Assembly: GCF_902459465.1 (NCBI RefSeq)
Contig: NC_047068.1
Span: 14,942,001-15,006,000 of the forward strand
Length of the DNA: 64,000 bases
DNA from: Asterias rubens
Taxonomy: Eukaryota
Direction of reading: 5' to 3'
Below are positions 1-36,479 of the stretch, in pieces. The stretch's first letter is position 1. Every line of letters starts with the position of its first letter. The notes beneath the pieces were generated by a model that saw nothing but the letters and a program-made list of their open reading frames with translations, was not told the DNA's origin and did not search any database. The position numbers and the translations under genes are program-made.

Positions 1-319
1 AAGTTCTAGCCTGAACATCTGACACAACTACCAAGCATGTCTGACATGTTCCCTTTGTCACCTTTTCTTGGTGTTTTCAAGAGATCTTATGCATTTAAAG
101 TCTTATCAGTATTTTGGGTGTGGTTTTTTTGAAAAGGTTGCAGCCTAAAAATTGCAGAGTTGTAAACCGCAAGACCTCAAAAATATGCCAAATGCAAAGC
201 CATTGTTGCTTGCTTATTTCTTTCCCATTTTCAATTACCATATTGATATACCTTTGCTCTGAGACCACATAAATTCTATACCGAATAAGGATTATGGCAA
301 TCTTTTGGCCGGATTTTTA

Positions 320-600
320 TTAACTCTTTCAGTGCCAAGGTCGTACATGTACGATCTACTGGATGTTTTCTGAAAGCGCCATTATTGTACACACAACCTT
401 TTGTTTGTACTTAAAAAGTGTCATCAATCATTCATGTACGACCATTAATATAATGTTATCGCATTATCACTAAAAAAAAAAATACTATAGACTTTGGGAT
501 GTACCAAGGCAACACAAAATAGCAAGATATATTTTTGTTTGGTTAGAAAGACTTATTTGCTTGTTTGTTATACAAAATTTTGAAAACCAAAAAAAGCTGG
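320..600 (+). mobile_element. piggyBac-like non-autonomous element fragment (second copy 13184-13460)
   Basis: Begins TTAA-CTCTTTCAGTGCC; alignable by eye over ~270 bp with 13184-13460 (TTAA-CTATTTCAGTGCCAAGG...GACTTTGGGATGTA); right end not found. Confidence 0.45.
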
Positions 601-1009
601 ACATTTTAGGTTCAAAATTTTAGGTTCAGCAACAGTTACTGTTGTGCTAGTTAGTAATCTTTATCTTGCTTACAAGCGTTGCAATTCATGGCTGTGATGG
701 GTCAGAACTCAACGCAGTAGTGCTGGTCTATTGTATTGTTGGAAAAGTAGGACATCAATAACACCCAAGGATTTGTGATTGGCCAGAACCTTTCTGTAAT
801 GTTGAAATGCAAACGTTTGATTGGACCAGAGCGTATACCACTCAACCTAATTCCAACCATGCAAGTTTCATGGGATGTAATTTGTAGGCCACTTAGTGTC
901 AATTATATTTCTCAAGGTAGCCTCATGGGAGATTTTATTGGTTGGTTCCAGCCGTCGCTTCTCTAAAGGCAGGTGAACTTGTATCTCTTTAGACCAAAAT
1001 CGATAACAA

Positions 1010-1565
1010 TCAATACTGTTTTAATTTTCTCACGTTGATCTTGTTGAACAGTGAGCCCCGACTTCCGGTAGGTCTCCATAACCCTATAGAAAATATCCAA
1101 GTCTCTGTAAACAACAAAGCAGTCTGAGCTTGTATTGAAACGTGGCAATCTTGTAGAAGCAATTGTGCTCGGGATAAATTTAGCACGGTATTGACAGTCT
1201 GAAATAAAAAAATTACTCATGCAAAAAACAGAATTTGTTATTTCATTAAGACAGCATAAGGGCAGGCACATCGTATCTCTTAGAATTGATATTATTCTTA
1301 GAAACTGTTTTAATTTTCTCAAGTTGATCTTGTTGAACAGTGGGCACGGACTTCCAGTAGGTCTACCTCCTACAGAAACAAAAACAGGTCTCTGTAAACA
1401 CCAAAGTCATCCTTGCTTGTATTGAAACCTGTAGATCTTTTTGAAGCCAATGAAGCGCAGTGTAATAGCTATGGTCTTTGGGGTAAATTTAGCATCGGGT
1501 TCACAGCCTGATATTAAATTCTACTGATGTCAAGAAACAACATTTGTTGTTATTCAATTAAGAGA
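1010..1565. repeat. Diverged direct tandem duplication, unit ~290-310 bp
   Basis: TTAATTTTCTC.GTTGATCTTGTTGAACAGTG at 1021 and 1310; GTCTCTGTAAACA, TTGTATTGAAAC and AAATTTAGCA recur in the same order. Confidence 0.75.
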
Positions 1566-2261
1566 TATATTTTTGTTGCAAACATTGTTGCTTAAATAAT
1601 CATAATAAATAATAATAAACACATCTAATAGGAATACCTTTTTAACAACGAATATTATTACTCAAGAAAACTCAATGGCAAATTCTTTGGGGCTTGGGGG
1701 GGGAGGGGGGTTAGGGAGAAGGTCTTGAAAGTCAGAACTTTAAGTACAACTTATCAAATGTTGAAACTTTGGACAATTCCCAAATACTTCAGTGATTCCC
1801 TGTCTAAACAAAACTACAGAAATGAAAAGAAAGATCTACGAGTTTTGCTTGATTTCCATCACTCAGTTTATTCAACGTCATTGATCACTGGAAACACATT
1901 ATATACCGTATGTACATTATGAACAGCAAACAGCGAACTAGAAATACACTGTTGAAGATGCGCAGTATTTTTCTCTCTACAAGAACAATGTAATATGCCT
2001 TTTATTAATATTAAGCATCATTGTAATTAAAAAACGAGGCTACAGGTGCAGGGCTAAATGGTGACCACTGATATTGTGGCTGTGATTGGTCGAGCTCAAA
2101 AGGGGTGGAGCTTACTGGATCAGTGTTTTGGTGGCACTGTGCCAATAGCTTCGTTTTGAATTACAATGATAACATTATGCCTATTAAGAAATGCGTATTT
2201 GTTACTAGAACTTGACCAATGGTGAGGTGGCAAACTATGGCAACAGCAAAGTTCGCTTCAT

Positions 2262-2532
2262 CCCAGGTCAAAATTCCAGTTGAACCTAGTTAACTGGGGT
2301 CAACTGGTTCAACTGGATATTGATCAAACTCGTCCATTTTCCATATTAACCAACTGGTTTGTACTAGGTTTAACTTTGTTCAACTAGGTTGAAATTATAA
2401 ACCAGTTGGTCTCTGTCCATTTTCGTAATTAAACCAACTGGTTTTAACTGTGTTTAACTAGTTTATCAACTGGTTTCAACTAGTTCCAGTTAAACCCAGT
2501 TTAACTACGTTCAACTGGAATTTCGACCTGGG
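2262..2532. mobile_element. 271-bp MITE with CCCAGG termini and 2-bp TSD (AT)
   Basis: ~40-bp TIRs CCCAGGTCAAAATTCCAGTTGAAC / GTTCAACTGGAATTTCGACCTGGG, flanked AT...AT; same-length copy at 44306-44576. Confidence 0.85.
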
Positions 2533-3432
2533 ATGACTGTAGATCAATCCATTTAGTTGCACTCAGCGTTATTACTAGTTTCAATTTTAAAACATATTTA
2601 CAAATGCAAATGTTTACATTTAAAGCTACTTATCAACTGTAATTTCTATGCAAGGCTGCTTATTTAATGACAATAAAAAGCAGAGAAATTCTCGAAGGTC
2701 TTGCAATTCGTAGCTACTTTTTGTGCTTACTTCAAAGCTTTATGAAGTTGTTTATATCGCCAAACTTGTTTATGAATCAAGCTGGCTTGTGAAATAAAGG
2801 CATCTAGAATCTAGACCCGAACAACAATGCACCTTATTTTTGACAGCGCGAGGGCGCAATAAATAGTATTTTTATTTTTTCGTAGGGTGTACACGATTCG
2901 CCCTGCACAGATTAACAGGCCTTCAGTCACTTTTGTTGCGCCGTAGTTTCAATTTGCTTTTTTAAAGGTGGATTATAACGGCTCCTTAAAAAATCTTATT
3001 GTCCGTGATGGATTAGTTGTCTGTGGTGGTAATGTGTTCCAATCTTTAGTAATTGTTTTTTTGGTATGAATGAATATGCCCCCGGAAGTGATTGGGAGCG
3101 CCCTCACATGGTCAAAAATATGGCCCATAGCCTGAAAAGAAATTTCAAGGGGCTGTGTTGTCATGATCAAAGCAGGCCTGTGGCTGTACATGTATATTAA
3201 TATATGGAATTATCTCACCAAGATCCTGCACACAGTGCCCTTGACCCAATTCACCTGACGTCATCATCAGAATAATCTTGGATGCATCATTTTGGTGGTT
3301 GGTGGTCAATATCACTGTTCATTATTCAGTGAGTGCGCATTTTAGGGGACCCTGCGTTTACAGGTAAACCTATTGATCACCAAAATGGTGAGCGTGGCAC
3401 AGTCATCGCCTGTGACGGGTTCAATAGATTTG

Positions 3433-3614
3433 CAGGCCTGATACATCACGAAGGCAATAAAGGTGATTGCCTCCATGCCCCCTACTGGTCATTGCCTTAG
3501 TGCTTTTGAAATGCCTTGAGCAGTAGAAATTTACATTTTCCTCATAGGGTGCCATTGCCAAAGAAAAAATGCCTGGGTGCCCTTGCCCTTGTATAAATTA
3601 AGCATGCAGGCCTG
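3433..3614. mobile_element. Short CAGGCCTG-bounded interspersed repeat (hAT-like MITE), copy 1
   Basis: Alignable over ~170 bp with 7120-7291 (GATTGCCTCCATG, CTGGTCATTGCCTTAGTGC, TGCCCTT); no TSD verified. Confidence 0.6.
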
Positions 3615-4560
3615 GATTGAATACCGAGGGAGGGCATGTGTGGCGCAGTAACTGGTTGAGATTTCTTATTTCCCTGTGCTCATGATAACACAGCCCCTTT
3701 AAATTCTGTCTCCTGAAAAGCAGTTTCAACAAATAGGTACATTAGAACCTTGCATTTCCATTATTATCTACATTATTATTCGATATGGCTTTTTATAACA
3801 CATAAGCGCAAATCTAATACAATTTATACAATTTGTACAACTTTAAATTTGCAAACTATACAAGAAAATTAATCCACTTTTTTAATAGAAACCTCTACTT
3901 TTATATTCAAATAATCGCCCTTTTTGATCCAATTCACCTAAAGTCATCAACACAATAATATCTCCTGAAGTTGAGCAGAGTAGGCCTATACTGTTCGAAA
4001 TGTCGAGACCAAACCGGCTCTTCTCAGAGCCAACACTCCCTCAAAAGAGATTTTACACATGGTTGTACCCGCAAGTCTACTATTCATATTTATATTTATC
4101 TTCAATTATGAAGATAATTGCTGATAAAAACCTATATTGTGTTGGATATGGGACGCAGAAGCGCTATATTTTTCCATATTCCACTCGCGCTTGTGTGATA
4201 CCTTATTTATCTGCAAGCAAACTTGGCGCTGACATAGAACACACAAGACGCAGGTAGTGATATTAGCCGTGCAATATAGGTTTTTATCACCACTCCATTC
4301 TGCGAATCTGATTGGAGGATTAGCGCGTACTTGAAGATAATAGTCACTCTCACAATAACATTGGTTGGGCAATTTGGGAACCAGTTTTCCTGTGAAGTAC
4401 GTGTTTGTTCATGCTTTTGTCTGTGTGGTACTATAGTGTGTAAAGTTCATCACTGTTGTAACAAAGAGACAAGTGGACTGCTTCAGCCAAATTTTATGGA
4501 GAGAATTTTTTTTATAATTTTTATATACGGTAGTACTTTTTTTCTTTGAACACGAAACAC

Positions 4561-5114
4561 AGAATTAATCAGGCAGTTTTAAATAAATGTACAAGAATTG
4601 TACAATTAATCGAGCAGTTTTAAATAAATGTACAAGAATTGCACAATTAATCGAGCAGTTTTAAATAAATGTACAAGAATTGCACAATTAATCGAGCAGT
4701 TTTAAATAAATGTTCAAGAATCGCACAATTAATCAGGCAGTTTTAAATAAATGCCTAATGTATTTATGTAGTTGTACAAGAATCACACAATTAGCCAGGC
4801 AGTTTGAAGAAAATGTACAAGAATCGCACATCAGGCAATTTTAAGTAAATGCCTAATGTATGTATGTACAAGTAGTTGTACAAGAATTGCACAATTAGCC
4901 AGGCAGTTTGAAGAAAATGTACAAGAATCGCACATCAGGCAATTTGAAGTCAATGCCTAATGTATGTATGTAGTTGTACAAGAATTGCACAATTAAGCAG
5001 GCAGTTTGAAGAAAATGTACAAGAATCGCACAATTAATCAGGCAATTTAAAGTTAATGCCTAATGCATGTATGTAGTTGTACCATGGTTGTACAAGAATC
5101 GCACAATTAATCGC
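4561..5114. repeat. 41-bp minisatellite grading into a ~100-bp higher-order unit
   Basis: CGAGCAGTTTTAAATAAATGTACAAGAATTGCACAATTAAT with period 41 (4611, 4652, 4693); ATGCCTAATG variant recurs about every 100 bp from 4751. Confidence 0.9.
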
Positions 5115-5136
5115 ATTATGAAAAAGATGCACTGTT

Positions 5137-5238
5137 TGGGGTTAGGGGAAAGGTTAGGGTTGGGGTTAAGGGTTAATATAGGGTTAGGGTCAAGGTTTGT
5201 GTTAAAATTAGGGTAAGAGTTAATGTTAGGGTTTAGGT
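5137..5238 (+). repeat. Degenerate telomere-like (TTAGGG) tract
   Basis: Multiple GGTTAGGG/TTAGGGT units, e.g. GGGTTAGGGGAAAGGTTAGGGTTGGGGTTAAGGG and TTAGGGTTTAGGTTAGGGTT. Confidence 0.75.
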
Positions 5239-5277
5239 TAGGGTTGCACTCCCTAACTCTTGGAATTATCAGAAAGA

Positions 5278-6321
5278 TTAAGGAATTTCACGTAATTTCA
5301 TGCTGCTCGTTTTCAGGGGTTCCCTTTTAAAGGTTTCCCACCAAATACCCTGTTCAGCTGAAGATATTGAGCTTATGTCGTGGTATACACCATTTAAGTT
5401 AGAACCCAAACCCAGTGAGCAGTAATTAAACCACCAAGCTCCACGGTGGACTTCCGCACAGTTCTTGTCATGGACATTATCGTTGTCCTTATCCCTAGTT
5501 GTAAATGGCTGGCCAAAGGGCAGAGAGCCACCAGCAGGACCAGTGACTGTACCGAGATTAAGTTTGTAATTCTCACCGATAATCGAAGCATATTGGTACT
5601 TTGCATAAGCTGTTTGACCGTCCCATCCCTCAAGATCTACTCTGAGGTCCCATGACCCTAGAGAGGTCAGGGCCACTAAGATATCATTGCCAAGCCAGTA
5701 CTCACCAGATGGATCACCAAAGCCAGACTTGTACTCGGCCCAGTTGCGGTCAAAGTCTACACTGCCATCCAGTCGCCTCTGAAATACAGTCCATCCCCCA
5801 CCATCAGTCTCCATGTCACAGTATACTTGCAGAGCCTGAGTAGTGCTGCCACCTGGGTAGATGGGATACACTTTACTTTGGGTGTTTCCTGTGTTCAAGA
5901 GCTGCTTACAAGTTCCAAGTTTAGGCAACGGGCTGATCGAATGAGCAGTTGTGGACTCAGTTGATATGTAGTGAGTTGTGTCCTCATCTTCATCAAAGTA
6001 AACACTCCCTTGATCTTCAAGAAAGTCTTGGAGATGCCCAGCTCTTGTTGCATTATTCAGCTCACAGAGTTTCTTACACTCATAGAAGTTGAAAGACTTA
6101 CAGTCCTCATCCATGCTGCAATCTCGTCCACAGATGACATCATTGGCAACAGTTTTCCATTTCTGTACATAGTTTTTGAGGACCTTGTTTTCTGCACTGT
6201 GGTAAAACTGATGTTTTAGCCCACTACACAGACTTCCAAAACTCCTAGCCTGCTTCAACATTAGCAGAGACACCAGTAGACCCACGCAATGAAAATATGT
6301 CATCAAACGTACTTCCCCCAT
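5278..6321 (-). CDS. PAN/apple + fibrinogen-related domain secreted protein, copy 1 (347 aa, minimal stalk)
   Basis: Intronless ORF; first ATG 6321 (alternative 6303); hydrophobic N-terminus; CGRDCSMDEDCKSFNFYECKKLCELN PAN-like motif; FReD motifs VYCDMETDGGGWTVFQRR, EYWLGND, GAWWF, NLNG. Confidence 0.9.
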   Translation of the reverse strand: MGEVRLMTYFHCVGLLVSLLMLKQARSFGSLCSGLKHQFYHSAENKVLKNYVQKWKTVANDVICGRDCSMDEDCKSFNFYECKKLCELNNATRAGHLQDFLEDQGSVYFDEDEDTTHYISTESTTAHSISPLPKLGTCKQLLNTGNTQSKVYPIYPGGSTTQALQVYCDMETDGGGWTVFQRRLDGSVDFDRNWAEYKSGFGDPSGEYWLGNDILVALTSLGSWDLRVDLEGWDGQTAYAKYQYASIIGENYKLNLGTVTGPAGGSLPFGQPFTTRDKDNDNVHDKNCAEVHRGAWWFNYCSLGLGSNLNGVYHDISSISSAEQGIWWETFKREPLKTSSMKLREIP

Positions 6322-13460: not shown

Positions 13461-13470
13461 AGCATTAAAC

Positions 13471-14127: not shown

Positions 14128-15426
14128 TTATCTTAACTTCATACTGCATGACTTGATTGGTTTATCCTTTATCCATTCATTCCACCGGATGCCTCGTCTG
14201 GTAGGGTAGCTCTGCCCATATTCACCATTTAAGTGAGACTTCACTGTGCAGTCTCCGAACCACCAGGCTCCATTAGCTGTGTCTGCACAATTCCCACTGT
14301 CATAGTCATCATTGTCTCTACCCTTTGTTGTGAAATCTTTCTTATTGCTATCACCCATGGAGTCTGCTTGGCCACCGTCATAATTATCGTAACTGAATTG
14401 GTAATTACTACCAGAAATGCTTACTCCACTATACTTTGCATATCCATTAGAACCTGCCCATGATTCAGCATCTACCCGTAGATTTGTATAACCTGCTGAA
14501 GTCAGTGTGACTAAGTTATCATTGCCAAGCCAGAACTCTCTTGATGGGTCACCGAAGCCAGTCTGGTATTCAGTCCAGCTTTTATAAAAGTCTAGAGTGC
14601 CATCAATTCTCTTCTGAAATACAATCCATCCTCCACCATCAGTCTTCATGTCACAGTACACCTTCATACCAGGTGCACTGGTACCCTTTGGGTAGATTGT
14701 GTATACACCACTCTCAGTGTAACCACCAGATTGAAATGCCTTACAGTCTTTGAGTTTCGGCAGGGGGCTTGGAGTTGAAACGAAGGGGGTTGTTGTCTCA
14801 GTGGTTGAGGGTCGAGTTGTGGTCTCAGTTGATGGGGGTCGAGTTGTTGGCTCAGTGGATGTGGGTCGAGTTGTTGTCTCAGTGGTTTTGGGTTGATTTG
14901 TTGTCTTAGTGGTTGAAGGTTGAGTGGTTTGGTCAGATGTGGACTTCACAGAGGATGTTTCCATTTCACAGTAAATCTGCTGACAGTTCACCAACCCATC
15001 AGGGCAGATGGTGTAATATCCACTTTTCTCAATCCCTCCCTGACAACTTTTGAAGCATTCAAATGTTTTATCAACGATGGAACGAATAGGTGTGCCCTCA
15101 TCCATGTCAAAGTACATATATTCTTGATCTTCAACAAAGTCTTCAGTGTGCTCCTTCCTTGTAGAATTGTTCAACTCACAAAACCCTCTACATTTGTAGA
15201 AGTTGAAAGACTTACAGTCTTTCTCCAGACTGCAATCTCGTCCACAGATGACATGATTGGCCACAGTTTTGTTCTTGTACACAAAGTTCTTGAGGACCAT
15301 GTTTTCAGCACTGAAGAACTGGTGTTCCAACTGACCACACTGACTGCCAAACCTTTCCGCCACCATCGATGGAGAAAACCCCCAAACTGTCATGAAATAG
15401 AGGACAGAGAGAATTCGCAGAGCCAT
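14128..15426 (-). CDS. PAN + truncated FReD-N module + mucin stalk + FReD protein, copy 2 (432 aa)
   Basis: ATG 15426, signal peptide MALRILSVLYFMTVWG, PAN Cys motif, ~5-6 degenerate 9-aa Thr/Pro repeats, complete FReD (YCDMKTDGGGWIVFQKR, EFWLGND, GAWWF). Confidence 0.92.
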   Translation of the reverse strand: MALRILSVLYFMTVWGFSPSMVAERFGSQCGQLEHQFFSAENMVLKNFVYKNKTVANHVICGRDCSLEKDCKSFNFYKCRGFCELNNSTRKEHTEDFVEDQEYMYFDMDEGTPIRSIVDKTFECFKSCQGGIEKSGYYTICPDGLVNCQQIYCEMETSSVKSTSDQTTQPSTTKTTNQPKTTETTTRPTSTEPTTRPPSTETTTRPSTTETTTPFVSTPSPLPKLKDCKAFQSGGYTESGVYTIYPKGTSAPGMKVYCDMKTDGGGWIVFQKRIDGTLDFYKSWTEYQTGFGDPSREFWLGNDNLVTLTSAGYTNLRVDAESWAGSNGYAKYSGVSISGSNYQFSYDNYDGGQADSMGDSNKKDFTTKGRDNDDYDSGNCADTANGAWWFGDCTVKSHLNGEYGQSYPTRRGIRWNEWIKDKPIKSCSMKLR

Positions 15427-17596: not shown

Positions 17597-19006
17597 TTAA
17601 GGTTTACGTAGTATCATACTGCATGCTTTGATGGGTTGATTCCATTCGTACCATACAATGCCTCGTTTGACACCAAGGTTCTGCTCATATTCACCATTTA
17701 AGTGAGACTTCACTGTGCAGTCTTTGAACCACCAGGCTCCATGAGTTTGTTCTGCACAATTCTCATCGCTCGCCTCATCATTGTCTTTATCCTTTGTTGT
17801 GAACTTTTTGCCTTTGTTGTCATTAAGAGAGTTTTTTGCAGGTGCCCCTAATTTGTAATTGGTATAAGTGAATATATATTCACTTCCAGTAACGCTTACA
17901 CCATCATACTCTACATATCCTGTTTCACCATCTGATTCAAGAACCACCCGTAGCTTGGTAAAACCTGCTGAGGTCAGGGCCACCAAGTTCTCATTGCCAA
18001 GCCAGTACTCACCAGATGGATCACCAAAGCCAGACTTGTACTCATCCCAGTTGCGGTCAAAGTCTACACTGCCATTCAGTCGCCTCTGAAATACAATCCA
18101 TCCCCTATCATCAGTCACCATGTCGCAGTACACCCGCATATCAGCTGCACTGGATCCACTTGGGTAGACTGTGTATACGTTACTCCTGCTATAACCAGTA
18201 TCTCGAAACTCTTGGCAGCTGCTGAGTTTAGGCAGGGGGCTCTGAGCTGAAAAGAAGGGAGTTGTTGGCTCAGTGGATGAGGGTTGAGCTGTTGGCTCAG
18301 TGGATGAGGGTCGAGTTGTTGGCTCAGTGGATGAGGGTTGAGTTGTTGGCTCAGTGGATGAGGGTTGAGTTGTTGGCTCAGTGGATGAGGGTTGAGTTGT
18401 TGGCTCAGTGGATGAGGGTTGAGTTGTTGGCTCAGTGGATGAGGGTTGAGTTGTTGGCTTAGTGGATGAGGGTTGAGTTGTTGGCTCAGTGGATGAGGGT
18501 TGAGTGGTCTGGTCTGTTATAGATGTCTTCACAGAGGATGTTTCCATTTCACAGTAAATCTGCTGACAGTTCACCAACCCATCAGGGCAGATGGTGTAAT
18601 ATCCACTTTTCTCAATCCCTCCCTGACAACTTTTGAAGCATTCAAAAGTTTTATCAACGGTGGAACGAATAGGTGTGCCCTCATCCATGTCAAAGTACAA
18701 ACTTTCTTGATCTTCAACAAAGTCTTCAGTGTGTTCCGTCCTTGTAGAATTGTTCAACTCACAAAACCCTCTACATTTGTAGAAGTTGAAAGACTTACAG
18801 TCTTTCTCCAGACCGCAATCCCGTCCACAGATGACATGATTGGCCACAGTTTTGTTCTTGTACACAAAGTTCTTGAGGACCATGTTTTCAGCACTGAAGA
18901 ACTGGTGTTTTAACTGACCACACTGACTGCCAAACCATTCCGCCATCGATGGAGAAAACCCCCAAATTGTCATGAAATAGAGGACAGAGAGAATTTGCAG
19001 ATCCAT
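17597..19006 (-). CDS. PAN + truncated FReD-N + mucin stalk + FReD protein, copy 3 (469 aa)
   Basis: First ATG 19006 (the ORF-track start at 19039 is TTG); signal peptide; PAN; ~9 EPTTQPSST repeats; complete FReD. Confidence 0.92.
   Translation of the reverse strand: MDLQILSVLYFMTIWGFSPSMAEWFGSQCGQLKHQFFSAENMVLKNFVYKNKTVANHVICGRDCGLEKDCKSFNFYKCRGFCELNNSTRTEHTEDFVEDQESLYFDMDEGTPIRSTVDKTFECFKSCQGGIEKSGYYTICPDGLVNCQQIYCEMETSSVKTSITDQTTQPSSTEPTTQPSSTKPTTQPSSTEPTTQPSSTEPTTQPSSTEPTTQPSSTEPTTQPSSTEPTTRPSSTEPTAQPSSTEPTTPFFSAQSPLPKLSSCQEFRDTGYSRSNVYTVYPSGSSAADMRVYCDMVTDDRGWIVFQRRLNGSVDFDRNWDEYKSGFGDPSGEYWLGNENLVALTSAGFTKLRVVLESDGETGYVEYDGVSVTGSEYIFTYTNYKLGAPAKNSLNDNKGKKFTTKDKDNDEASDENCAEQTHGAWWFKDCTVKSHLNGEYEQNLGVKRGIVWYEWNQPIKACSMILRKP
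18262..18512 (-). repeat. Coding 27-bp minisatellite (~9 units) in copy 3
   Basis: GAGTTGTTGGCTCAGTGGATGAGGGTT repeated. Confidence 0.95.
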
Positions 19007-24294: not shown

Positions 24295-26454
24295 TTAAGG
24301 TTTACGTAGTTTCATACAGCATACTTTGATGGGTTGATTCCATTTGTACCATACAATGCCTCGTCTGCCAACAGGGTTTTGCTCATATTCACCATTTAGG
24401 TGAGACTTGACTGTGCAGTCTTTGAACCACCAGGCTCCATGAGTTTGTTCTGCACAATTCTCGCCATTATCGTTGTCGTCCTTTGTTTGAAATGGATTAT
24501 TCTTGTTGTCATTTAGAGAGTCATCTGCATTGCCACCTATGAAATTGTCATAACTGAATATATATTCAATACCAGTAATGCGAACTCCACTATACTCTGC
24601 ATGTCCTTCTTCACCTGTCCATGTTGTAAGATCTACTCGTAGATTGGTATAACCTGCTGAGGTAAGTTCCACTAAGTTATCATTGCCAAGCCAGAATTCT
24701 CCTGATAGGTCACCGAAGCCAGTCTGGTATTCTGTCCAGTTGCGATAAAAGTCTACACTGCCATCAATTCGCCTCTGAAATACAATCAATCCCCTACCAT
24801 CAGTCTCCATGTCACAGTACACCTTCATACCACTGGGTCCACTTGGGTAGATTGTGTATACATTACTCTTGCTATAACCAGCATCTCGAAACTCCTGACA
24901 GCTGCTGAATTTAGGCAGGGGGCTCTGAGTTGAAAAGAAGTGAGTTGTTGGATCACTGGTCAATTGATGAGTTGTTGGCTCAGTGGATGAGGGTTGAGTT
25001 GTTGGCTCAGTGGATGAGGGTTGAGTTGTTGGCTCAGTGGATGAGGGTTGAGTTGTTGGCTCAGTGGATGAGGGTTGAGTTGTTGGCTCAGTGGATGAGG
25101 GTCGAGTTGTTGGCTCAGTGGATGAGGGTCGAGTTGTTGGCTCAGTGGATGAGGGTTGAGTTGTTGGCTCAGTGGATGAGGGTTGAGTTGTTGGCTCAGT
25201 GGATGTGGGTTGAATTGTTGGCTCAGTGGATGAGGGTTGAGTTATTGGCTCAGTGGATGAGGGTTGAGTTGTTGGCTCAGTGGTTGAGGGTTGAGTTGTT
25301 GGCTCAGTGGATGAGGGTTGAGTTGTTGGCTCACTGGATGTGGGTTGAGTTGTTGGCTCAGTGGATGTGGGTTGAGTTGTTGGCTCAGTGGATGAGGGTT
25401 GAGTTGTTGGCTCAGTGGATGAGGGTTGAGTTGTTGGCTCACTGGATGTGGGTTGAGTTGTTGGCTCAGTGGATGAGGGTTGAGTTGTTGGCTCAGTGGA
25501 TGAGGGTTGAGTTGTTGGCTCAGGGGTTGAGGGTTGAGTTGTTGGCTCAGTGGATGAGGGTTGAGTTGTTGGCTCAGTGGATGAGGGTTGAGTTGTTGGC
25601 TTAGTGGATGAGGGTTGAGTTGTTGGCTCAGTGGATGAGGGTTGAGTTGTTGGCTCACTGGATGAGGGTTGAGTTGTTGGCTCACTGGATGAGGGGTGAA
25701 TTGTTGGTTCAGTGGATAAGGGTTGAGTTGTTGGTTCAGTGGATGAGGGGTTAGTTGTTGGCTCAGTGGATGAGGGTTGAGTTGTTGGCTCAGTGGATGA
25801 GGGTTGAGTTGTTGGCTCAGTGGTTGAGGGTTGAGTTGTTGGCTCAGTGGATGAGGGTAGAGTTTTTGGCTCAGTTGATGAGGGTTGAGTTGTTTGCACA
25901 TTGGATGAGGGGTGAGTTGTTGGTTCAGTGGATAAGGGTTGAGTTGTTGGTTCAGTGGATAAGGGTCGAGTTGTTGGCTCAGTGGATGAGGGTTGAGTTG
26001 TTGGCTCAGTAGATAATGGTCGGGTGCTTGGCTGAACCAAAAGTTCTTTACAACTTTTGAAGAGAGTGAGAGAGTTTTTAGCCACTGAGAAGATGGGTGT
26101 GTCCTCATCTGCATCAAAGTGTACACTCCCTTGATCTTCAAGAAAGTCTCGAGGATGCTCAGCTCTTGATGCATTATTCAGCTCACAGAGTTTCTTACAT
26201 TCATAGAAGTTGAAAGACTTACAGTCCTCATCCATGCTGCAATCTCGTCCACAGATGACATAATTAAGTGTGGTTTTAGTCTTGTACTCAGAATTCTTAA
26301 GAACTCTGTTTTCTGCACCAATCAATTGTTTTTTCAGTGAACCACATTTCCCTCTGTCAATTCCAAAGCTCTTCACCGATAATGAGTTGATCAATGCCAG
26401 TATAAAAATAACATTCAACTGTAAAACACAGATCATCAACACCCGTTGAATCAT
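24295..26454 (-). CDS. PAN + long mucin stalk + FReD protein, copy 4 (719 aa)
   Basis: First ATG 26454 (26478 is GTG); hydrophobic leader; PAN motif; ~40 9-aa repeats; complete FReD ending KLRKP. Confidence 0.92.
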   Translation of the reverse strand: MIQRVLMICVLQLNVIFILALINSLSVKSFGIDRGKCGSLKKQLIGAENRVLKNSEYKTKTTLNYVICGRDCSMDEDCKSFNFYECKKLCELNNASRAEHPRDFLEDQGSVHFDADEDTPIFSVAKNSLTLFKSCKELLVQPSTRPLSTEPTTQPSSTEPTTRPLSTEPTTQPLSTEPTTHPSSNVQTTQPSSTEPKTLPSSTEPTTQPSTTEPTTQPSSTEPTTQPSSTEPTTNPSSTEPTTQPLSTEPTIHPSSSEPTTQPSSSEPTTQPSSTEPTTQPSSTKPTTQPSSTEPTTQPSSTEPTTQPSTPEPTTQPSSTEPTTQPSSTEPTTQPTSSEPTTQPSSTEPTTQPSSTEPTTQPTSTEPTTQPTSSEPTTQPSSTEPTTQPSTTEPTTQPSSTEPITQPSSTEPTIQPTSTEPTTQPSSTEPTTQPSSTEPTTRPSSTEPTTRPSSTEPTTQPSSTEPTTQPSSTEPTTQPSSTEPTTQPSSTEPTTHQLTSDPTTHFFSTQSPLPKFSSCQEFRDAGYSKSNVYTIYPSGPSGMKVYCDMETDGRGLIVFQRRIDGSVDFYRNWTEYQTGFGDLSGEFWLGNDNLVELTSAGYTNLRVDLTTWTGEEGHAEYSGVRITGIEYIFSYDNFIGGNADDSLNDNKNNPFQTKDDNDNGENCAEQTHGAWWFKDCTVKSHLNGEYEQNPVGRRGIVWYKWNQPIKVCCMKLRKP
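24943..26030 (-). repeat. Coding 27-bp minisatellite (~40 units) in copy 4
   Basis: Same 27-bp unit as copies 3 and 6; ~1090 bp with no frameshift. Confidence 0.95.
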
Positions 26455-28189: not shown

Positions 28190-30240
28190 CCATGTGGCCT
28201 TGATTTTACAGATAACATGATACAGTTCTTAAATAAAACTCTGATCATGCTACAAAGGAATGCTGCTTCAAATATATTAAATGAAAGTATTCAGAGCCTT
28301 TACTGCATTGGTCACTATTGTTCACGTATTGTCATGTTACAAGTTTTGAGTCGGCTTTGTTCAAAGGTATTCCACCAAATACCGTTGTAAGGAAGTGTTT
28401 TAACTGGAACATATTGGCCATTGAAGTTTGACTTCAAGCAGGCATTATACCACCAGGGTCCCTTGTGAGTTATTGCACAGTTACCATTTATTTTTTCATC
28501 ATGATCTCTATCATTTGTAGTAAAGGGATACACTTTATTATGGGTGTTTCCTGCGTTCAAGAGCTGCTTACAAGTTCCAAGTTTAGGCATTGGGATCTTC
28601 GTTGATGAGTAGTGAGTTATAGACTCAGTTGATGAAGGGTGAGATGTAGACTCAGTTGATGAGTAGTGAGTTGTGGGCTCAGTCAATGAGGGGTGAGTTG
28701 CAAGCTCATTCAATTAGGTGGGAGTTGTGAGCAAAGATGCCAAGAAGTCAGCTGTGTCCTCATCTGCATCAAAGTATACACTCCCTTGATCTTCATTGTA
28801 GTTGAAAGACTTACAATCGTCATCCATGCTGCTATCTCGTCAACAAATGACATAATTGGCAACAGTTTTCTGTTTGTGTGCATGGTTTTGAATAACTCTG
28901 TTTTTTTTGCACTGTGCAGTAGGTGTTCAGTTTCACCACACTGAAATCCTACAACATTGGTTATCAGCATAGAAAACACACACAAATTTGCTGAGCTTAA
29001 AAAGACTGCCCATCCTTTTGGAGCCATCTTTTCTTAATATTTATCCAACGAATCAATTTGATGCTACTTGTTATAACAACGCAAGTTCAACCACTCCAAG
29101 ACCAACAACTCTTTTCTGGAGGCCTTAGACATTCAATTTAGCTATAAGTATCAATTTGTGCAGGCACTTCACAAATCGTTATTAGTCACTGATTGTCTAT
29201 TCTCGCTGGATGACCATTCAGCTGTTTTCTCTTCCCACTTTTTTCTATGTCTCTAAAGCTGTACTTAACTTCAAGCGAGCTGTGCCGGCCTACTTTTCCC
29301 AAGAGCCTTAATTTTTCGACCTGAAACGGCCTTCCTTTTTTTCAACGATTCAGTTAATAGAAACCTCTTTTAAGTGCCCTTTTTCTTTTCTTTTTCTATT
29401 TAGATTTTTTTTAAGCAATCGCAATTGATCCAATCATGTATGAATTCAAAGTAAGCCCAGTTTCCTGGATTGAAGTTGAGCCTAGACAAAGCCCTCTGTA
29501 AGACTTAGAAATTTGAACAAAAGGAGAGTTAAATTTACAGGCACTATCAGATAATTTTCTGGCTGACTCTTAATCTTCTTAAGGTATTACAGCGTTATAT
29601 CTTTTACTTTTTAGTGTTTTAAGGTTCACAGTTGGAAAACAAGTACAAAACCAATGAGAACTGTTGCAAAAAAGTATAACTAAAGAGGGACAATATGAGG
29701 TCCATGGTTGCAGGTATCTACACACTTGTGTGCTCAGGTAGGTATCCCATGGTCCTATAACAAAAGGGACAATAAATACAAACCAGATCCCTAAGGTTGC
29801 GTGTGTCACACATTTAAGCATTTCTCATTTACTATGTTCCTTTGTGCATCCGGCCTCCACCCCCACCCCACAGTCAAAGCCATCTCAATTAAATACGGAT
29901 TTATTCATTGCATTGTTAATTCAGTTGTATATTATCTGCTATAGCCAACTGAAGGTCATACATTTAAGCCTCTTCAAGTTATTTTTAGTCACCAACCTTA
30001 GCTTTAAAATGTGCCACACAAGCATCTAATGTGACTCACTGTCCAATAAAATAAGTAAACAACATGACAACAACTTTTTTTTTTTTAATAGAAACTAATA
30101 TCAATTGCAGATTAACAAAACTACATGTTTTTGATTTTCCTGACTCAATTAATTTTTTCTTTTTCTTTTGTAAGCAATTCCACCAATTCCTTTTTAAAAT
30201 TTAATTATCAAACCTTTCTTAAACAGATTTTAATTTAAGA
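28190..30240. repeat. Segmental duplicate of 32920-35700 (gene 6 plus flanks)
   Basis: Flanks align by eye: AAAACTCTGATCATGCTACAAAG, TCTGGAGGCCTTAGACATTCAATT, AAAAGGAGAGTTAAATTTACAG, TCTCAATTAAATACGGATTTATTCAT in both. Confidence 0.85.
28315..29027 (-). pseudogene. PAN-FReD pseudogene, copy 5 (paralogue of copy 6)
   Basis: Starts MAPKGWAV like copy 6; +2 frameshift in an A run (28891-28898); in-frame TGA at 28840-28842 replacing the Gly of CGRDC; TAA near 28714; 63-bp PAN deletion and 363-bp FReD deletion. Confidence 0.9.
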
Positions 30241-31049: not shown

Positions 31050-31429
31050 TTAAAGGAACAATACAGAATTGGTTTTGCTAGCAAAAAAGTTGCTGGCAGT
31101 GTAAGCACTTTATGTAACCCACCATATACATAAACTGACAAACCTGCAGAAGTTTGAGATCGATCGGCCATCTGGGTCACGAGAGAATAGTGAAAAACCG
31201 ATCGCAAATTTTGCATTGCATCGATGCCAAAACAAAAATGAATAAAACGCTCACTGAGCGATACACTCCAAACGAGAAACTAGATTACTTATTTCTCATC
31301 AAATATGACATTTCAGACGGAAATATTTCAAGGGATGTTACCTACTATCATCATCATCAGACCAAGTTTTATGTAAATCTGTGATCTTCACGATTTGTGT
31401 TTCTTACCACTTCTGTAACGTTCCTTTAA
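31050..31429 (+). mobile_element. TTAA MITE family C
   Basis: TTAAAGGAACAATACAGAATTGG ... CCACTTCTGTAACGTTCCTTTAA. Confidence 0.75.
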
Positions 31430-32999
31430 GTAATCTGCAGAGACAGCTTCTCTTCTAATATCTGATTTGTTGTGCATTGAGTTTTTTCATCCATCTTGGA
31501 TTTACAGTTTTATTTTTTGCGCAGATTTCTTAAGATTGACAAACTTTGTATAAAGACAAAGTATACAGAATAGCACCCTGCATTAATGTTAAAAATAGAA
31601 GCTCAATTTGGTTGTCACCCCTGTATTGAGTTTCACTGACATACTTGCATGTGCATCTCCAAGCCATTGTCAGTGTTTTAAACTGTTATTGTACCATACT
31701 ACAACGGTATATCGCATCGATGTGGTGATGTTATAAGTGGTGGAAAGATTGTATGACACCCAGGTGTTTTGAGCAAGTGACATCATTAGTGCAGAGCGCT
31801 ATTGATAGATGTAGAAACAAAAATCGATCAGTGTTAATTTCAAATGTCAGTCGTTATTAAGGTCATGCCTGAATTTTGTCTGAAATACTGTCCCAAGTTT
31901 AGGAAACTTGCTGCTGAAAATCCCTACATGTTACATACTTTGATTTCTGCAACTGAAATAAGCCCATAAGCGGAGTATGCATGACAATACATAAACTGTT
32001 TAATATATTTTATACAATGTGACCATTAAATTAGATAAAAATTCACATCTTGTTACTATGTGAATTTGTTAAAAATTAGGCGATAGGAAATAATCAGGCC
32101 AAAAAATTACTTTTCCCTTTAAATGTTGTGAATGGTCAAATGTTTACAGATTTTCAAATACTTTATAAAAAAATTGTTTCACACACGTAAGTAGACATCA
32201 ACTAACCCACCCCATCTCAATTCCCAAACATGAATAAATATTTGTTTACATAATAATATTAAAAACAAAGATTTACAATAACAATCCATTTGTGATGTAA
32301 TATTATCCCCAAATCTTCCTTTCTTGTGTTATTAACCAGCATGCAATTTCTCATCCCATTTCAGCTGGTTTCCTCGTTTTGTCTTTTTCTTTTTTGTGCC
32401 CAGTAAAACCCCCAAAGCCCAAACCACTTTTCAAAGTGTTGTGTACAAAAGACACTTCCTCAACAGAGTTTCATGTTTATAGTTCAGTTTAAAAGAAGAA
32501 ATCAAATGACCCCCATCTTACCACTCCCTTGCTACCATGGTGGGCTCAACATTTTGAAATCCACTATGGCCATTGATCCATTCAAACTTCAGAACATACA
32601 CAAAATTTGAATACTTAAACAGGCACCCCCTAATTTTTAACCCTTAGAATTCAACAAAATGTGATTAAATAGCCTGAAATGTGTATCCTAACATATGCAT
32701 AAAATAACAAGTCTTTGAAATTTTTTACTCGATTCGTCAATAAAGTTGCAAGAGAACACTTAAAGAAAATTTATTGCACAAATTTGAATTCATGGCACAG
32801 CTACAGCTAATGCGTGATTCTCACATAGCAACAGCCGCAGCCATAATCATGTGCATACTGCTTTAATTTAATGTGACACATAATATCAGCCATTTTTTCA
32901 ATGGGCAGAGAGTAGTATGGCATTGAGTTTACAGATCACATGATATCGTTTTTATATAAAACTCTGATCATGCTACAAAGAAATGCTGGTTCATGAATA

Positions 33000-34379
33000 T
33001 TAGATGAAAGTATTCAGAGCTTTTACTTCATCGGTAATTGTTTTTTCACGTATTTTCATGTTACATGTTTTGAGACGGGCTTTTACAAAGGTATCCCACC
33101 AAATACCCTGGTAAAGCATTATGCTTGCTGGAAAATATTTGCCATTTAAGTTTGACCTCATGCAGGAATTATACCACCAGGGTCCCTTGAAAGTTATTGC
33201 ACAGTTACCATTTTGTCTTTCATCATGATCTCTATCATTTGTAGTAAAGGGTTGCCCATTGTGAATGTCAAGAGAGTCCCCAGCAGTACCTGTGTATTCA
33301 CCCACTGTAAGTTTGTAATTCTCACCAGTAATCGTAAATGATTGGTACTTTGCATAAGCTGTTTGACCGTCCCATACCTCAAGATCAATTCTGAGGTCCC
33401 ATGACCCATTAGAGGTCAGGCCCACTAAGATATCATTGCCAAGCCAGTACTCACCAGATGGATCACCAAAGCCAGACTTGTACTCAGCCCAGTTGCGGTC
33501 AAAGTCTACACTGCCATCCAGTCGCCTCTGAAATACAGTCCATCCCCCACCATCAGTCTCCATGTCACAGTATACTTGCAGAGCCTGAGTAGCGCTGCCA
33601 CCTGGGTAGATGGGATACACTTTACTTTGGGTGTTTCCTGCGTTGAAGAGCTGCTTACAAGTTCCAGGTTTAGGCATTGGGATCTTGCTTGATGAGGGTT
33701 GAGCTGTTGGCTCAGTTGATATGGGTTGAGTTGTTGGCTCAGTGGTTGAGGGTTGAGTTGTTGGCTCAGTGGTTGAGGGTGGAGTTGTTGGCTCAGTGGA
33801 TGAGGGTTGAGTTGTTGGCTCAGTAGATGAGGGTTGAGTTGTTGGCTCAGTGGATGAGGGTTGAGTTGTTGGCTCAGTGGATGAGGGTTGAGTTGTTGGC
33901 TCAGTGGATGAGGGTTGAGTTATTGGCTCAGTGGATGATGGTTGAGTTGTTGGCTCAGTGGATGAGGGTTGAGTTGTTGGCTGATCCAAAAGTTCTTTAC
34001 AACTTTTGAAGAGAGTGAAAGAGTTATCAGCCACTGAGTAGATGGGAGTGTCCCTATCTGCATCAAAGTATACACTCCCTTGATCTTCAAGAAAATCTTG
34101 AGGATGCTCAGCTCTTGTTGCATTATTCAGCTCACAGAGTTTGTTACATTCTTTGAAGTTGAAAGACTTACAGTCCTCATCCATGCTGCAATCTCGTCCA
34201 CAGATGACATAATTGGCAACAGTTTTCTGTTTGTGTGCTAGGTTTTGAAGAACTCTGTTTTCTGCACTGTGTAGGTGTTCAGTTTCACCACACTGAAACT
34301 CTATAGCATTGGTTATCAGCATAGAAAACACACAAAAACATGCTGAGTATAAAATGACTGCCCATCCTTTTGGGGCCAT
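33000..34379 (-). CDS. PAN + mucin stalk + FReD protein, copy 6 (459 aa)
   Basis: ATG 34379, signal peptide, PAN motif, ~11 repeats, complete FReD (GPWWYNSCMRSNLNG). Confidence 0.93.
   Translation of the reverse strand: MAPKGWAVILYSACFCVFSMLITNAIEFQCGETEHLHSAENRVLQNLAHKQKTVANYVICGRDCSMDEDCKSFNFKECNKLCELNNATRAEHPQDFLEDQGSVYFDADRDTPIYSVADNSFTLFKSCKELLDQPTTQPSSTEPTTQPSSTEPITQPSSTEPTTQPSSTEPTTQPSSTEPTTQPSSTEPTTQPSSTEPTTPPSTTEPTTQPSTTEPTTQPISTEPTAQPSSSKIPMPKPGTCKQLFNAGNTQSKVYPIYPGGSATQALQVYCDMETDGGGWTVFQRRLDGSVDFDRNWAEYKSGFGDPSGEYWLGNDILVGLTSNGSWDLRIDLEVWDGQTAYAKYQSFTITGENYKLTVGEYTGTAGDSLDIHNGQPFTTNDRDHDERQNGNCAITFKGPWWYNSCMRSNLNGKYFPASIMLYQGIWWDTFVKARLKTCNMKIREKTITDEVKALNTFI
33688..33982 (-). 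repeat. Coding 27-bp minisatellite (~11 units) in copy 6
   Basis: Same unit as copies 3 and 4. Confidence 0.95.
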
Positions 34380-34420
34380 CTTTTCTTAATGTTTATCCAA
34401 CGAAACAATCGGCTGCTACT

Positions 34421-34427
34421 ATTTATA
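34421..34427 (-). promoter_or_regulatory. Candidate TATA box of FReD copy 6
   Basis: TATAAAT on the minus strand ~42 bp upstream of the ATG; motif match only. Confidence 0.3.
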
Positions 34428-34955
34428 ATGCAAGTTCAACCACCCCAAGAATTACAACTCTCTTCTGGAGGCCTTAGACATTCAATTGAGCTCTGAGTGC
34501 CAATTTGTGCAGGCTCTTAACAAACCGTTATCACTCACTGATTGTCTATTCTCGCTGGATGACCAATCAGCTGTTTTCTCTTCCCATCATTTTCTATGTC
34601 TCTAAAGCTGTAAATGAATTCAAGCAAGCTGTGCCCGGCTACTTTTCCCAAGAGCCTCAACTTGCCGTCAACCAGAAACACATGATGGACTTTATTTTTT
34701 TGTCGATGCAGTTAATAGAAACCTCTTTTTAATGTCCTTTTTGGGTTAATTTCTATTAAGATTTTTGTTAATCGATAGCAAATGATCAAAGTAAGCTGTG
34801 TTTCCTCAATAGAAGTTGGGCTTAAACAAAGCCCTCTCAAAGACATAGAAGTTTTAACAAAAGGAGAGTTAAATTTACAGTCACTATCAGATTATTTTCT
34901 GGCCGACTGTAAATCTTCTTAACGTATTAAGAGCCTTTCTCCGGTGTGCATCTGG

Positions 34956-35634
34956 CCTACCCCACCCCACATTCAAAGCCATGCTGAGATTTCTCAATTA
35001 AATACGGATTTATTCATGGCATTGAATCTGCTGCCAGCCAACTGAAGGCCATGTGTTTAAGCCTCTTCAATTTTATTTTTAGTCACAAAATGTAGGCTTT
35101 TCAAGTGTGTCACACCAGTTTTGACCATTTTGCTATTGTGCAAAAGACAAAAAAAACGAAATCAATGTACATATAAGAACATTTTTGTTGACTTTTTTCT
35201 GGGTTTCTATAGAGCACTAGTAAACATCATTTGCAGATGTTTTTAAAATCTCTTAACTTTTTTTCTTTTCTTTTGTGAGCAATGTTGCCCCTCCCCTACC
35301 CCACCCCACATTCAAAGCCATGCTGAGATTTCTCAATTAAATACGGATTTATTCATGGCATTGAATCTGCCGCCAGCCAACTGAAGGCCATGTGTTTAAG
35401 CCTCTTCAATTTTATTTTTAGTCACAAAATGTAGGCTTTTCAAGTGTGTCACACCAGTTTTGACCATGTTGCATTGTGCAAAAAACAAAAAAACAAAATC
35501 AATGTACATATAAGGACATTTTTGTTGACTTTTTTCTGGGTTTCTATAGAGCACTAGTAAACATCATTTGCAGATGTTTTTAAAATCTCTTAATTTTTTT
35601 TCTTTTCTTTTGTGAGCAATGTCGCCCCTCCCCT
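34956..35634. repeat. Near-identical tandem duplication, ~339-bp unit x2
   Basis: CCTACCCCACCCCACATTCAAAGCCATGC at 34956 and 35295; both units end GCAATGT.GCCCCTCCCCT. Confidence 0.92.
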
Positions 35635-35994
35635 TTAAAATTTGAAATACGAAACCTTAACTTAATTTAAACGTATTTGAATTTAAGACTCCACACCAGA
35701 TTTTGTGCATTATTTTTTAGGAAAATGTTTTGACTTTGGAAATATAATAAAGAGTCTGAGAAGGAAAAATTGCATTGGAATATTAAAAAAAAAGTTAAAG
35801 TTACCAATATCCATACACACAAGAGCAATGATGTTCAAGCATACACAGAGTATTACAAACAAATAAGTGAAGAGTATACTTTTTAAATCAAGGAGGAAGC
35901 ATGGTGCTCATTGTTACTATCACCACCAGGTCCAACATTGGCATTCAGGAGTTTCCTTAGAGCAGGTATTGTGGATAATTAGGAATATTGTTTC

Positions 35995-36110
35995 TCCTGA
36001 AGACGATCAGAGCATATTGATAAGAACTTTGAGTTGTCAACCACCGGTTCTTTTCAGAACCAAAATTACTCTTGAGGTTTACACTTGGTGCTACTGCAAA
36101 CCTCACCTGA
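35995..36110 (+). mobile_element. Short repeat resembling a Penelope-like element terminus (second copy ~42037-42150)
   Basis: C.GAAGAC.ATCAGAGCATA.TGAT..GAA shared by both copies, followed by alignable sequence to TGCAAAC/CGCAAAC. Confidence 0.4.
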
Positions 36111-36479
36111 TAATATTATTATTATTATATAGGATTTGAGGCATTGCATGGTGAGGTATCAATATATATTTGGTTTGTGGTAACACCATGTGTGTATCGA
36201 CTTGCCAGGTAGAGTTTGTTCTTAGAGAACTGTCTTTCTTTACTCTACTACCGTGGAGTAGATTTATCGGATGTTCAGGAGACTTCTCAGTTCTGAAAAG
36301 AACTGTCCTGCTTTTTAACTATTACCCGGGTGGATGGTACAGAAAATAGGCTGGGACTACTACTTTAGCTTATAGGATCAAAATTAACTGCACTACCGCG
36401 GAGTAAGTTCTTAAATTTGTGTTGTCTCTCTAATGTTATTACTTCAACATCCTAAAAGTCTTATCTTTTCCTTTTACAG

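What the first reader, a model, noticed from the sequence alone, without database searches (positions are those of the whole stretch)
1..36479. Whole PAN-FReD gene cluster appears nested antisense inside one >36-kb TSC2 intron
Seen: the first TSC2 exon (36480) starts after a strong acceptor at VYVRRPTG, an internal part of tuberin (recalled as roughly residue 1200 of 1807 in human, preceded by GWAE). Scanning 1-36479 by eye I found no exon ending in GWAE nor any other tuberin-like segment. The other TSC2 introns here are only 0.4-1.7 kb. Inference: one intron has expanded more than 20-fold by hosting a duplicating array of intronless lectin-like genes on the opposite strand of an mTOR-pathway housekeeping gene. 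That would place an evolving putative immune/secreted family inside open, transcribed chromatin, with scope for transcriptional interference.
Basis: partly seen in the sequence, partly recalled or inferred. Interest (0 to 1): 0.8.

Follow-up and report, generated by a model that had tools for sequence, protein, structure and literature searches.

The report
Lectin gene cluster inside TSC2 intron
In the starfish Asterias rubens, one intron of the growth-control gene TSC2 has grown to about 37.7 kb and holds six lectin-like genes on the opposite strand; this is a real and tidy case of the well-known "genes nested in an intron" layout.

Summary
The window is Asterias rubens chromosome LR699098.1. 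Sensitive tblastn with five or more full-length tuberins finds nothing of residues 1-1176 in 1-36479. The missing upstream exon lies just outside the window, at -1583..-1206. It ends ...CQGWAE|gtaagc in phase 0 and joins 36480 (VYVRRPTG, phase 0) to give exactly the contiguous peptide of other echinoderm tuberins.

The intron is therefore 37,685 nt with no gaps. The orthologous intron is 0.44 kb in Patiria and 1.4 kb in Acanthaster, with no lectin genes near TSC2 in either. Two independent RNA contig sets carry a ~6.8-kb contig with exon 36480-36753 at positions 3829-4104, as a full-length TSC2 mRNA would.

In Asterias amurensis the same cluster lies collinear inside an annotated 1991-aa tuberin gene, in an intron of about 46 kb. 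The cluster has five intact genes (PAN domain, mucin-like repeats, fibrinogen-related domain) and one broken copy, all antisense to TSC2.

Gene-family clusters nested in an intron are already known (insect TipE, GMC oxidoreductases). So this is a new member of a known kind. Its practical value is that the public A. rubens gene call wrongly splits TSC2. Transcriptional interference remains untested. Other notes of this scan record another nested lectin pair in this genome.

The parts
1..36479 (+). The window's share of one TSC2 intron. The whole intron runs from 1,205 bases before the window start to 36479 and is 37,685 nt long.
   Evidence: The donor ...TGGGCTGAG|gtaagc lies at window -1206/-1205 in L004. 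The acceptor is at 36479/36480. There are no tuberin hits in between and no N.
5278..6321 (-). G1: an intact PAN + fibrinogen-related gene of 347 aa without a mucin-like repeat tract.
   Evidence: ORF, Pfam. It is a called gene in the public record. Its A. amurensis orthologue is 95% identical.
14128..15426 (-). G2: an intact gene of 432 aa with PAN, about 5 copies of a 27-nt (9-aa) Pro/Thr/Ser repeat, and a fibrinogen-related domain.
   Evidence: It is a called gene in the record. Its words are held by some RNA-like runs.
17597..19006 (-). G3: an intact ORF of 469 aa from its ATG, with PAN, about 9 repeat copies and a fibrinogen-related domain. It is not among the called genes of the public record.
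   Evidence: It is absent from the gene list of L003.
24295..26454 (-). G4: an intact ORF of 719 aa with PAN, about 39 repeat copies and a fibrinogen-related domain.
   Evidence: It is called in the record with a 646-aa product.
28315..29027 (-). G5: a broken copy, with a frame change in the PAN part and about 120 residues of the fibrinogen-related domain missing.
   Evidence: It forms two short ORFs. tblastn gives fragmentary hits to G6 residues 1-52, 40-112, 229-256 and 377-446.
33000..34379 (-). G6: an intact ORF of 459 aa with PAN, about 11 repeat copies and a fibrinogen-related domain.
   Evidence: Short RNA contigs lie at 33432-33915 with depth 3-10. No gene with exactly this product is on record.
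36480..36753 (+). The first TSC2 exon after the large intron, beginning VYVRRPTG (274 nt).
   Evidence: tblastn. RNA contigs cover 36478-36753 and are cut exactly at both exon ends.
38389..48091 (+). The remaining TSC2 exons, including the Rap-GAP domain, up to the stop codon. Approximate exons: 38389-38562, 39107-39225, 39914-40687, 41696-41803, 42189-42275, 42765-42951, 44015-44154, 45532-45610, 46850-46941, 47867-48091.
   Evidence: tblastn against Acanthaster and Patiria tuberin, a splice-site search, and Pfam Rap_GAP. The coordinates are approximate. Exon 38389-38562 was not seen in the RNA contigs.

Best explanation
This is a host gene with a nested gene cluster. In the genus Asterias, the TSC2 intron between the exon ending ...CQGWAE and the exon beginning VYVRRPTG... 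has grown from about 0.4-1.4 kb to 37.7 kb in A. rubens and about 46 kb in A. amurensis. The growth comes from a tandem array of secreted PAN + mucin-like + fibrinogen-related (ficolin-like) genes lying on the opposite strand. TSC2 is still one transcription unit: RNA polymerase reads through the whole cluster and the intron is spliced out, giving a normal full-length tuberin mRNA of about 6.8 kb. The lectin-like genes are separate, single-coding-exon units read in the other direction, and they appear in only some samples. Shown here: the anatomy, the exon-exon continuity, the conservation in a sister species and the absence in two valvatid starfish. Inferred: that the array entered after forcipulatid and valvatid starfish diverged and before the two Asterias species split, that the genes encode secreted glycan-binding proteins, and that host and nested genes avoid interference by being expressed in different tissues.
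For: The genome and coordinates are identified. The upstream exon at -1583..-1206 is 77% identical to Acanthaster residues 1053-1178 and has a GT donor in phase 0. The joined peptide matches the uninterrupted sequence of three other echinoderms. Contigs of 6785 nt (X7) and 6789 nt (X8), from different studies, hold 36478-36753 at record positions 3829-4104. That leaves 3828 nt upstream, which equals about 1251 codons plus about 75 nt of leader. Contigs in X1 and X2 also break exactly at 36478, as expected from the shared 'AG' of GAG|GTG. The orthologous intron is 1.4 kb in Acanthaster and 0.44 kb in Patiria, and neither has a fibrinogen-related gene within TSC2 or 10 kb either side. A. amurensis has a 1991-aa tuberin call with all three domains running over both ends of three overlapping loci. 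These loci together hold the GWAE exon and six PAN + fibrinogen-related genes, collinear with the window at 88-95% DNA identity. Neither assembly has an N across the region.
Against: The letters of the RNA contigs upstream of 36478 were not shown, so the junction to the GWAE exon rests on lengths, phase and the two shared letters rather than on a read sequence. The public A. rubens gene call ends TSC2 after GWAE with a 63-nt terminal exon, giving a 1271-aa product without Rap_GAP. No A. rubens or A. amurensis tuberin appeared in two protein searches, and I cannot explain why. Evidence that the nested genes are expressed is thin.
Confidence: 0.9

Rival explanations
1. Gene fission. In A. rubens, TSC2 would be split into two independent genes: an N-terminal one ending shortly after GWAE, and a C-terminal Rap-GAP one with its own promoter inside or after the lectin cluster.
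For: The public gene call is a 1271-aa N-terminal product without Rap_GAP that ends at window -544 on a predicted 63-nt terminal exon.
Against: The ~6.8-kb contigs carry 3.8 kb of sequence upstream of exon 36480, and no contig starts within 33000-36477. The splice phases and the peptide are continuous across the junction. The sister species has a single 1991-aa call. No canonical AATAAA lies near -544.
Confidence: 0.04
2. Assembly artefact. A lectin cluster from elsewhere would have been wrongly joined into TSC2, for example between 34.4 and 36.4 kb.
For: None is direct. Repeats of very high depth flank the exon at 35955-36545 and 36743-37727, and such repeats could mislead an assembler.
Against: There is no N from -4722 to 64000. 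An independent assembly of A. amurensis has the same order: GWAE exon, then G1, G2, G3, G4 and G6. It is collinear up to window 35811.
Confidence: 0.02
3. Overlooked TSC2 exons or an alternative TSC2 promoter lie inside 1-36479, so the region would be several introns rather than one.
For: Non-coding first exons or lineage-specific micro-exons cannot be seen by protein similarity. RNA was laid only on 33000-38900.
Against: No residue is missing between GWAE and VYVRRPTG when compared with three other species. No tuberin-like segment was found. No ORF of 75 aa or more lies outside the lectin genes, apart from a few featureless ones. The contig lengths fit a direct junction.
Confidence: 0.04

Closest known systems
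[quoted passage not shown]
   Same: Several paralogues of one family sit together in one intron of a conserved host gene. The nesting arose in one lineage and is kept in related species. The host gene span varies widely, from 20 to 100 kb. Expression of the nested genes is distinct from that of the host.
   Different: The phylum differs (echinoderm), as do the host (TSC2) and the cargo (secreted PAN + fibrinogen-related lectin-like genes). Here the nesting is shown only within one genus. Coordinated expression has not been examined.
Nested (intronic) protein-coding genes of animals in general (Assis 2016, PMC5174743, and works cited there)
   Same: The internal genes are short, have few or no introns, lie on the opposite strand (about 71-73% do in Drosophila) and sit in the host's longest intron. 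Multi-gene 'complex nestings' are recorded.
   Different: The usual account is of short young duplicates landing in introns that are already long. Here the ancestral intron was short (0.4-1.4 kb), and the intron is long because of the inserted array.
Fibrinogen-related lectin families of invertebrates (ficolin-like, FREP-like); starfish genes named ficolin-, ryncolin- or MFAP4-like by automatic annotation
   Same: They have the same Fibrinogen_C domain, and dozens of PAN + Fibrinogen_C paralogues occur in Patiria, Acanthaster and both Asterias species. Tandem clusters are common.
   Different: Four of the intronic copies carry a 9-aa Pro/Thr/Ser repeat tract of 5 to 39 copies between PAN and the fibrinogen-related domain. 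No binding or immune function has been tested for any of them.

Membership tests
Host/nested gene arrangement | The internal genes lie wholly within one intron of the host gene. | tested here: met
   The donor is at window -1206/-1205 and the acceptor at 36479/36480. All six copies lie between 5278 and 34379.
Host/nested gene arrangement | The host exons on either side are joined in mature mRNA. | tested here: met
   Contigs of about 6.8 kb in two runs carry the exon at positions 3829-4104. All four runs break at 36478 and 36753. The joined peptide equals the contiguous sequence in other species. The upstream letters of the contigs were not displayed, so this is indirect.
Host/nested gene arrangement | The internal genes are transcribed as units of their own. 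| tested here: inconclusive
   Short contigs of depth 3-10 lie on G6. Words of G2 are held at 0.24-0.59 in four runs whose library kind is not on record, and at about 0 in three others. Strand and transcript ends were not seen.
Tuberin (TSC2) | The domains DUF3384 and Tuberin in the N-terminal part, followed by a C-terminal Rap_GAP domain. | tested here: met
   Rap_GAP is found in the window exons at E 1e-11 and 2e-17. DUF3384 + Tuberin are recorded on the upstream gene call. The sequence is colinear with Acanthaster and Patiria tuberin to the stop codon.
Fibrinogen-related (ficolin-like) secreted lectins | A C-terminal Fibrinogen_C globular domain. | tested here: met
   E 1e-57 to 1e-67 over nearly the full profile in G1, G2 and G6.
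Fibrinogen-related (ficolin-like) secreted lectins | A signal peptide, and glycan binding by the fibrinogen-related domain. | not testable with these tools
   Hydrophobic N-termini are visible in the translations, but no signal-peptide predictor or binding assay is available.

The most novel reading that the evidence does not exclude
The antisense lectin array may not be a passive passenger. When the lectin genes are strongly induced, convergent transcription across 37.7 kb could stall or prematurely end TSC2 transcription. That would yield less tuberin, or a truncated tuberin lacking the GAP domain (compare the annotated 1271-aa form that ends on a small exon 600 nt after GWAE). Induction of a lectin family would then be coupled to release of mTORC1 inhibition in the same cells.
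Probability: 0.07. Interest if true: 0.65.

Novelty: new member of a known kind. Interest (0 to 1): 0.3.

Why it matters
The finding corrects the gene structure of a core mTOR-pathway gene in a reference echinoderm genome. The public A. rubens call stops TSC2 at 1271 residues without its GAP domain, whereas the evidence here indicates a normal protein of about 2000 residues. It also gives a dated natural example of a short intron turned into a 38-46 kb one by a lectin gene array. The array is absent in valvatid starfish, present in both Asterias species, and has since gained or lost copies. It could therefore serve to study how nested clusters arise and whether they burden a housekeeping host gene. 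It does not reveal a new kind of genome organisation.

Tried and rejected
- Two protein searches for an A. rubens tuberin returned none, and none from A. amurensis either, although a 1991-aa call exists there. This remains unexplained and was not used as evidence.
- Exact-product look-ups for G6 failed twice. The first used wrong end coordinates. The second shows only that no gene with exactly that product is on record.
- An ENA contig with tandem PAN + fibrinogen-related genes gave no DNA and no tuberin mark, so it is uninformative about other species.
- I looked for transposon or other genes as the cause of the expansion. No ORF of 75 aa or more outside the lectin copies looked meaningful, and there are no tRNA genes.
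- I first read the public N-terminal model as a read-through of the donor (19 aa). Checking the model's end showed instead a separate 63-nt terminal exon.
The upstream exon, the rest of the intron and the other lectin genes could therefore not be examined with reads.
Full report
**What the window is.** An exact-product look-up of the 432-aa minus-strand ORF at 14131-15426 places the window on Asterias rubens chromosome LR699098.1 (assembly GCA_902459465.3). Record coordinates equal window coordinates plus 14,942,000. The window has no N.

**Checking the observation.**
- The exon at 36480 sits behind a pyrimidine-rich acceptor (ttttccttttacag|GTGTAC) and reads [20 protein letters not shown]....
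- A library-wide search with the Rap-GAP exon returned full-length tuberins. The closest are from Acanthaster planci (P0001, 1924 aa) and later Patiria miniata (P0151, 1993 aa).
- tblastn of nine tuberins against the window, run with word size 2 and no low-complexity filter, aligns P0001 residues 1177-1924 colinearly from 36477 to the stop at 48088.
- Nothing from residues 1-1176 aligns anywhere in the window. The only hit is an E 0.36 chance match on the other strand inside a lectin gene.
- The remaining TSC2 introns are 0.4-1.6 kb.
- On the minus strand between 5.3 and 34.4 kb lie six related copies. Five have uninterrupted ORFs of 347, 432, 469, 719 and 459 aa. One is broken (28315-29027).
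- Pfam finds PAN_1 and a near full-length Fibrinogen_C domain.
- Four copies carry a 27-nt (9-aa Pro/Thr/Ser) repeat tract of about 5, 9, 39 and 11 units.

**Where the rest of TSC2 is.**
- Looking up the annotated 347-aa product of the leftmost lectin gene fetched 4.7 kb of DNA to the left of the window (L004). It also showed a gene call on the TSC2 strand with Pfam DUF3384 + Tuberin and a 1271-aa product, ending at window -544.
- tblastn places the exon orthologous to Acanthaster residues 1053-1178 at window -1583..-1206, at 77% identity.
- That exon ends ...NIYQCNCWCQGWAE followed by gtaagc, a phase-0 donor. The acceptor at 36480 is also phase 0.
- The joined peptide...CWCQGWAE|[24 protein letters not shown]..., is exactly the uninterrupted sequence of Acanthaster, Patiria and the crinoid Anneissia. 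No exon is missing in between.
- The intron is 37,685 nt, from -1205 to 36479, with no N.
That exon simply lies 1.2 kb outside the window.

**Is TSC2 still one gene?** Contigs of four public runs of the same species were laid on 33000-38900.
- Two of them, from different studies, each contain a contig of 6785 or 6789 nt. In these, window 36478-36753 occupies record positions 3829-4104.
- The 3828 nt upstream fit about 1251 codons plus about 75 nt of leader. The 2.7 kb downstream fit the remaining coding sequence (about 2.0-2.3 kb) plus a 3' untranslated region.
- Shorter contigs in the other two runs also begin their match at 36478, with 836 and 20 further letters upstream.
- A start at 36478 rather than 36480 is what the GAG|GTG junction predicts. 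The last two letters of the GWAE exon (AG) equal the last two letters of the intron, and the third does not.
- All contigs leave the DNA at 36753, which fixes the donor at 36754.
- No contig was seen running from 33000-36477 into the exon.
- The tool did not print the upstream letters of those contigs. The junction is therefore strongly indicated but not read letter by letter.

**Comparison with relatives.**
- In Acanthaster the orthologous intron is about 1.4 kb (L001 38032-39449, no gap). In Patiria it is about 0.44 kb (L002 26406-26844).
- Neither species has a fibrinogen-related gene within TSC2 or 10 kb on either side.
- In Asterias amurensis (GCA_032118995.1, CP134962.1), three overlapping loci were fetched through orthologues of the lectin genes. 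In all three, a 1991-aa call with DUF3384 + Tuberin + Rap_GAP on the opposite strand runs over both ends.
- Merged, the three loci give 49.6 kb without N. They contain the GWAE exon at 3863-4240, followed by six intact PAN + fibrinogen-related genes. These are an extra copy (P0358) and the orthologues of G1 (95% aa), G2, G3, G4 and G6 (about 88-94% in the fibrinogen-related domain).
- The DNA is collinear with window 7831-35811 at 88-95% identity. It stops about 0.7 kb short of the next TSC2 exon, so that intron is about 46 kb.
- The nesting therefore predates the split of the two Asterias species and is absent from two valvatid starfish. Copy content has since changed: A. amurensis has an extra copy and A. 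rubens has a broken G5.

**Nature and age of the cargo.**
- PAN + Fibrinogen_C proteins are a large starfish family. The best 120 hits include dozens from Patiria, many from both Asterias species and some from Acanthaster. Automatic annotation names them ficolin-, ryncolin-, MFAP4- or angiopoietin-like.
- The intronic paralogues are 47-93% identical to each other, in a mosaic pattern. The G2 and G3 PAN parts are 93% identical while their fibrinogen-related parts are 58% identical. G6 is closest to G1 in the fibrinogen-related part (72%) and to G4 in the PAN part (77%).
- Because orthologues are far more alike than paralogues, most duplication happened well before the species split, or an already diverged segment moved in whole. 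'A duplicating array' is not shown for the present day.
- Apart from the lectin copies, the intron has no meaningful ORF and no tRNA genes. The rest is non-coding DNA with short repeats.

**Expression of the nested genes.**
- Only short contigs of depth 3-10 lie on G6.
- Words of G2 are held at 0.59 and 0.51 in two runs, and at 0.31 and 0.24 in two runs of the study that also gave a spliced TSC2 contig. They are held at about 0 in three runs that do hold TSC2.
- This suggests sample-specific expression distinct from the host's. The library kind of those runs is not on record, and no further read laying was allowed.

**How it probably works.** TSC2 is transcribed through the array and the 37.7-kb intron is removed. 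The lectin genes are independent antisense units. Published work on Drosophila nested genes reports four relevant points (PMC5174743):
- Most nested genes lie on the opposite strand.
- They sit in the host's longest intron.
- They are short.
- They diverge in expression from the host, which is read as avoidance of transcriptional interference.

Clusters of one family nested in one intron are described for insect TipE/Teh genes and GMC oxidoreductases (PMC3240667). Nested genes and intronic elements can also provoke intron retention and cryptic polyadenylation of the host (PMC3192792, title and abstract seen). Whether anything of the kind happens here is untested.

**The public A. rubens gene call.** The 1271-aa call ends on a predicted 63-nt exon at -606..-544 (AHEASHSHSSVDSESILIEN*), with no AATAAA nearby. 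Against the RNA contigs and the sister-species call, it is most simply a gene-prediction break caused by the huge intron.

**Novelty and score.** No paper in the held library links tuberin with nested genes or describes PAN + fibrinogen-related genes of echinoderms. The arrangement is nonetheless visible in the public annotation of A. amurensis and belongs to a well-described class. I rate it a new member of a known kind, with interest 0.3. It is solidly real, useful for correcting an annotation and as a dated example of intron growth by gene-array insertion, but it would not surprise a specialist.

Noticed in passing
window -606..-544 (L004:16866-16928, minus strand of the locus): The public A. 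rubens gene call splits TSC2. Its N-terminal product of 1271 aa lacks Rap_GAP and ends on a predicted 63-nt terminal exon about 600 nt after the GWAE exon. This is either a prediction artefact or a real short isoform.
   Followed up: partly
window 38389-38562 (+): This predicted TSC2 exon (174 nt, 58 codons, so skipping it keeps the frame) matches Acanthaster residues 1267-1332 at 39% identity. Its depth was about 0 in all four RNA contig sets, while the preceding exon had depth 5-112. It could be a cassette exon or a limit of the laying tool.
   Followed up: no
window 35955-36545 and 36743-37727: These stretches reach enormous summed depth (10^3 to 10^5) with many internal 'joints' in every RNA contig set. 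They look like highly repeated short elements flanking the TSC2 exon.
   Followed up: no
L007:10001-11271 (A. amurensis): A. amurensis has an extra intact PAN + fibrinogen-related gene (P0358, 338 aa) between the GWAE exon and the G1 orthologue. Its PAN part is like G4 and its fibrinogen-related part is like G2. A. rubens has no gene at that place.
   Followed up: partly
window 14789-14929, 18259-18505, 24968-26014, 33691-33982: The 27-nt repeat encoding a 9-aa Pro/Thr/Ser unit varies from about 5 to about 39 copies among paralogues. The A. amurensis gene calls (338-350 aa) omit this tract, perhaps because it was spliced out by the annotator.
   Followed up: no
L005, L006, L007 (A. amurensis), strand of the lectin genes: A 136-aa histone-domain gene call runs over both ends of all three loci, a span of more than 49 kb. 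It is probably an annotation artefact.
   Followed up: no
window 17597-19006 and 33000-34379 (-): G3 and G6 have intact ORFs with both domains. G3 is missing from the called genes of the A. rubens record, and no gene with exactly the G6 ORF product is on record.
   Followed up: partly
window 53880-59971 (+): A multi-exon ubiquitin-specific protease gene lies downstream of TSC2 on the same strand. Its last exon matches the Pfam UCH domain at E 2e-17.
   Followed up: no
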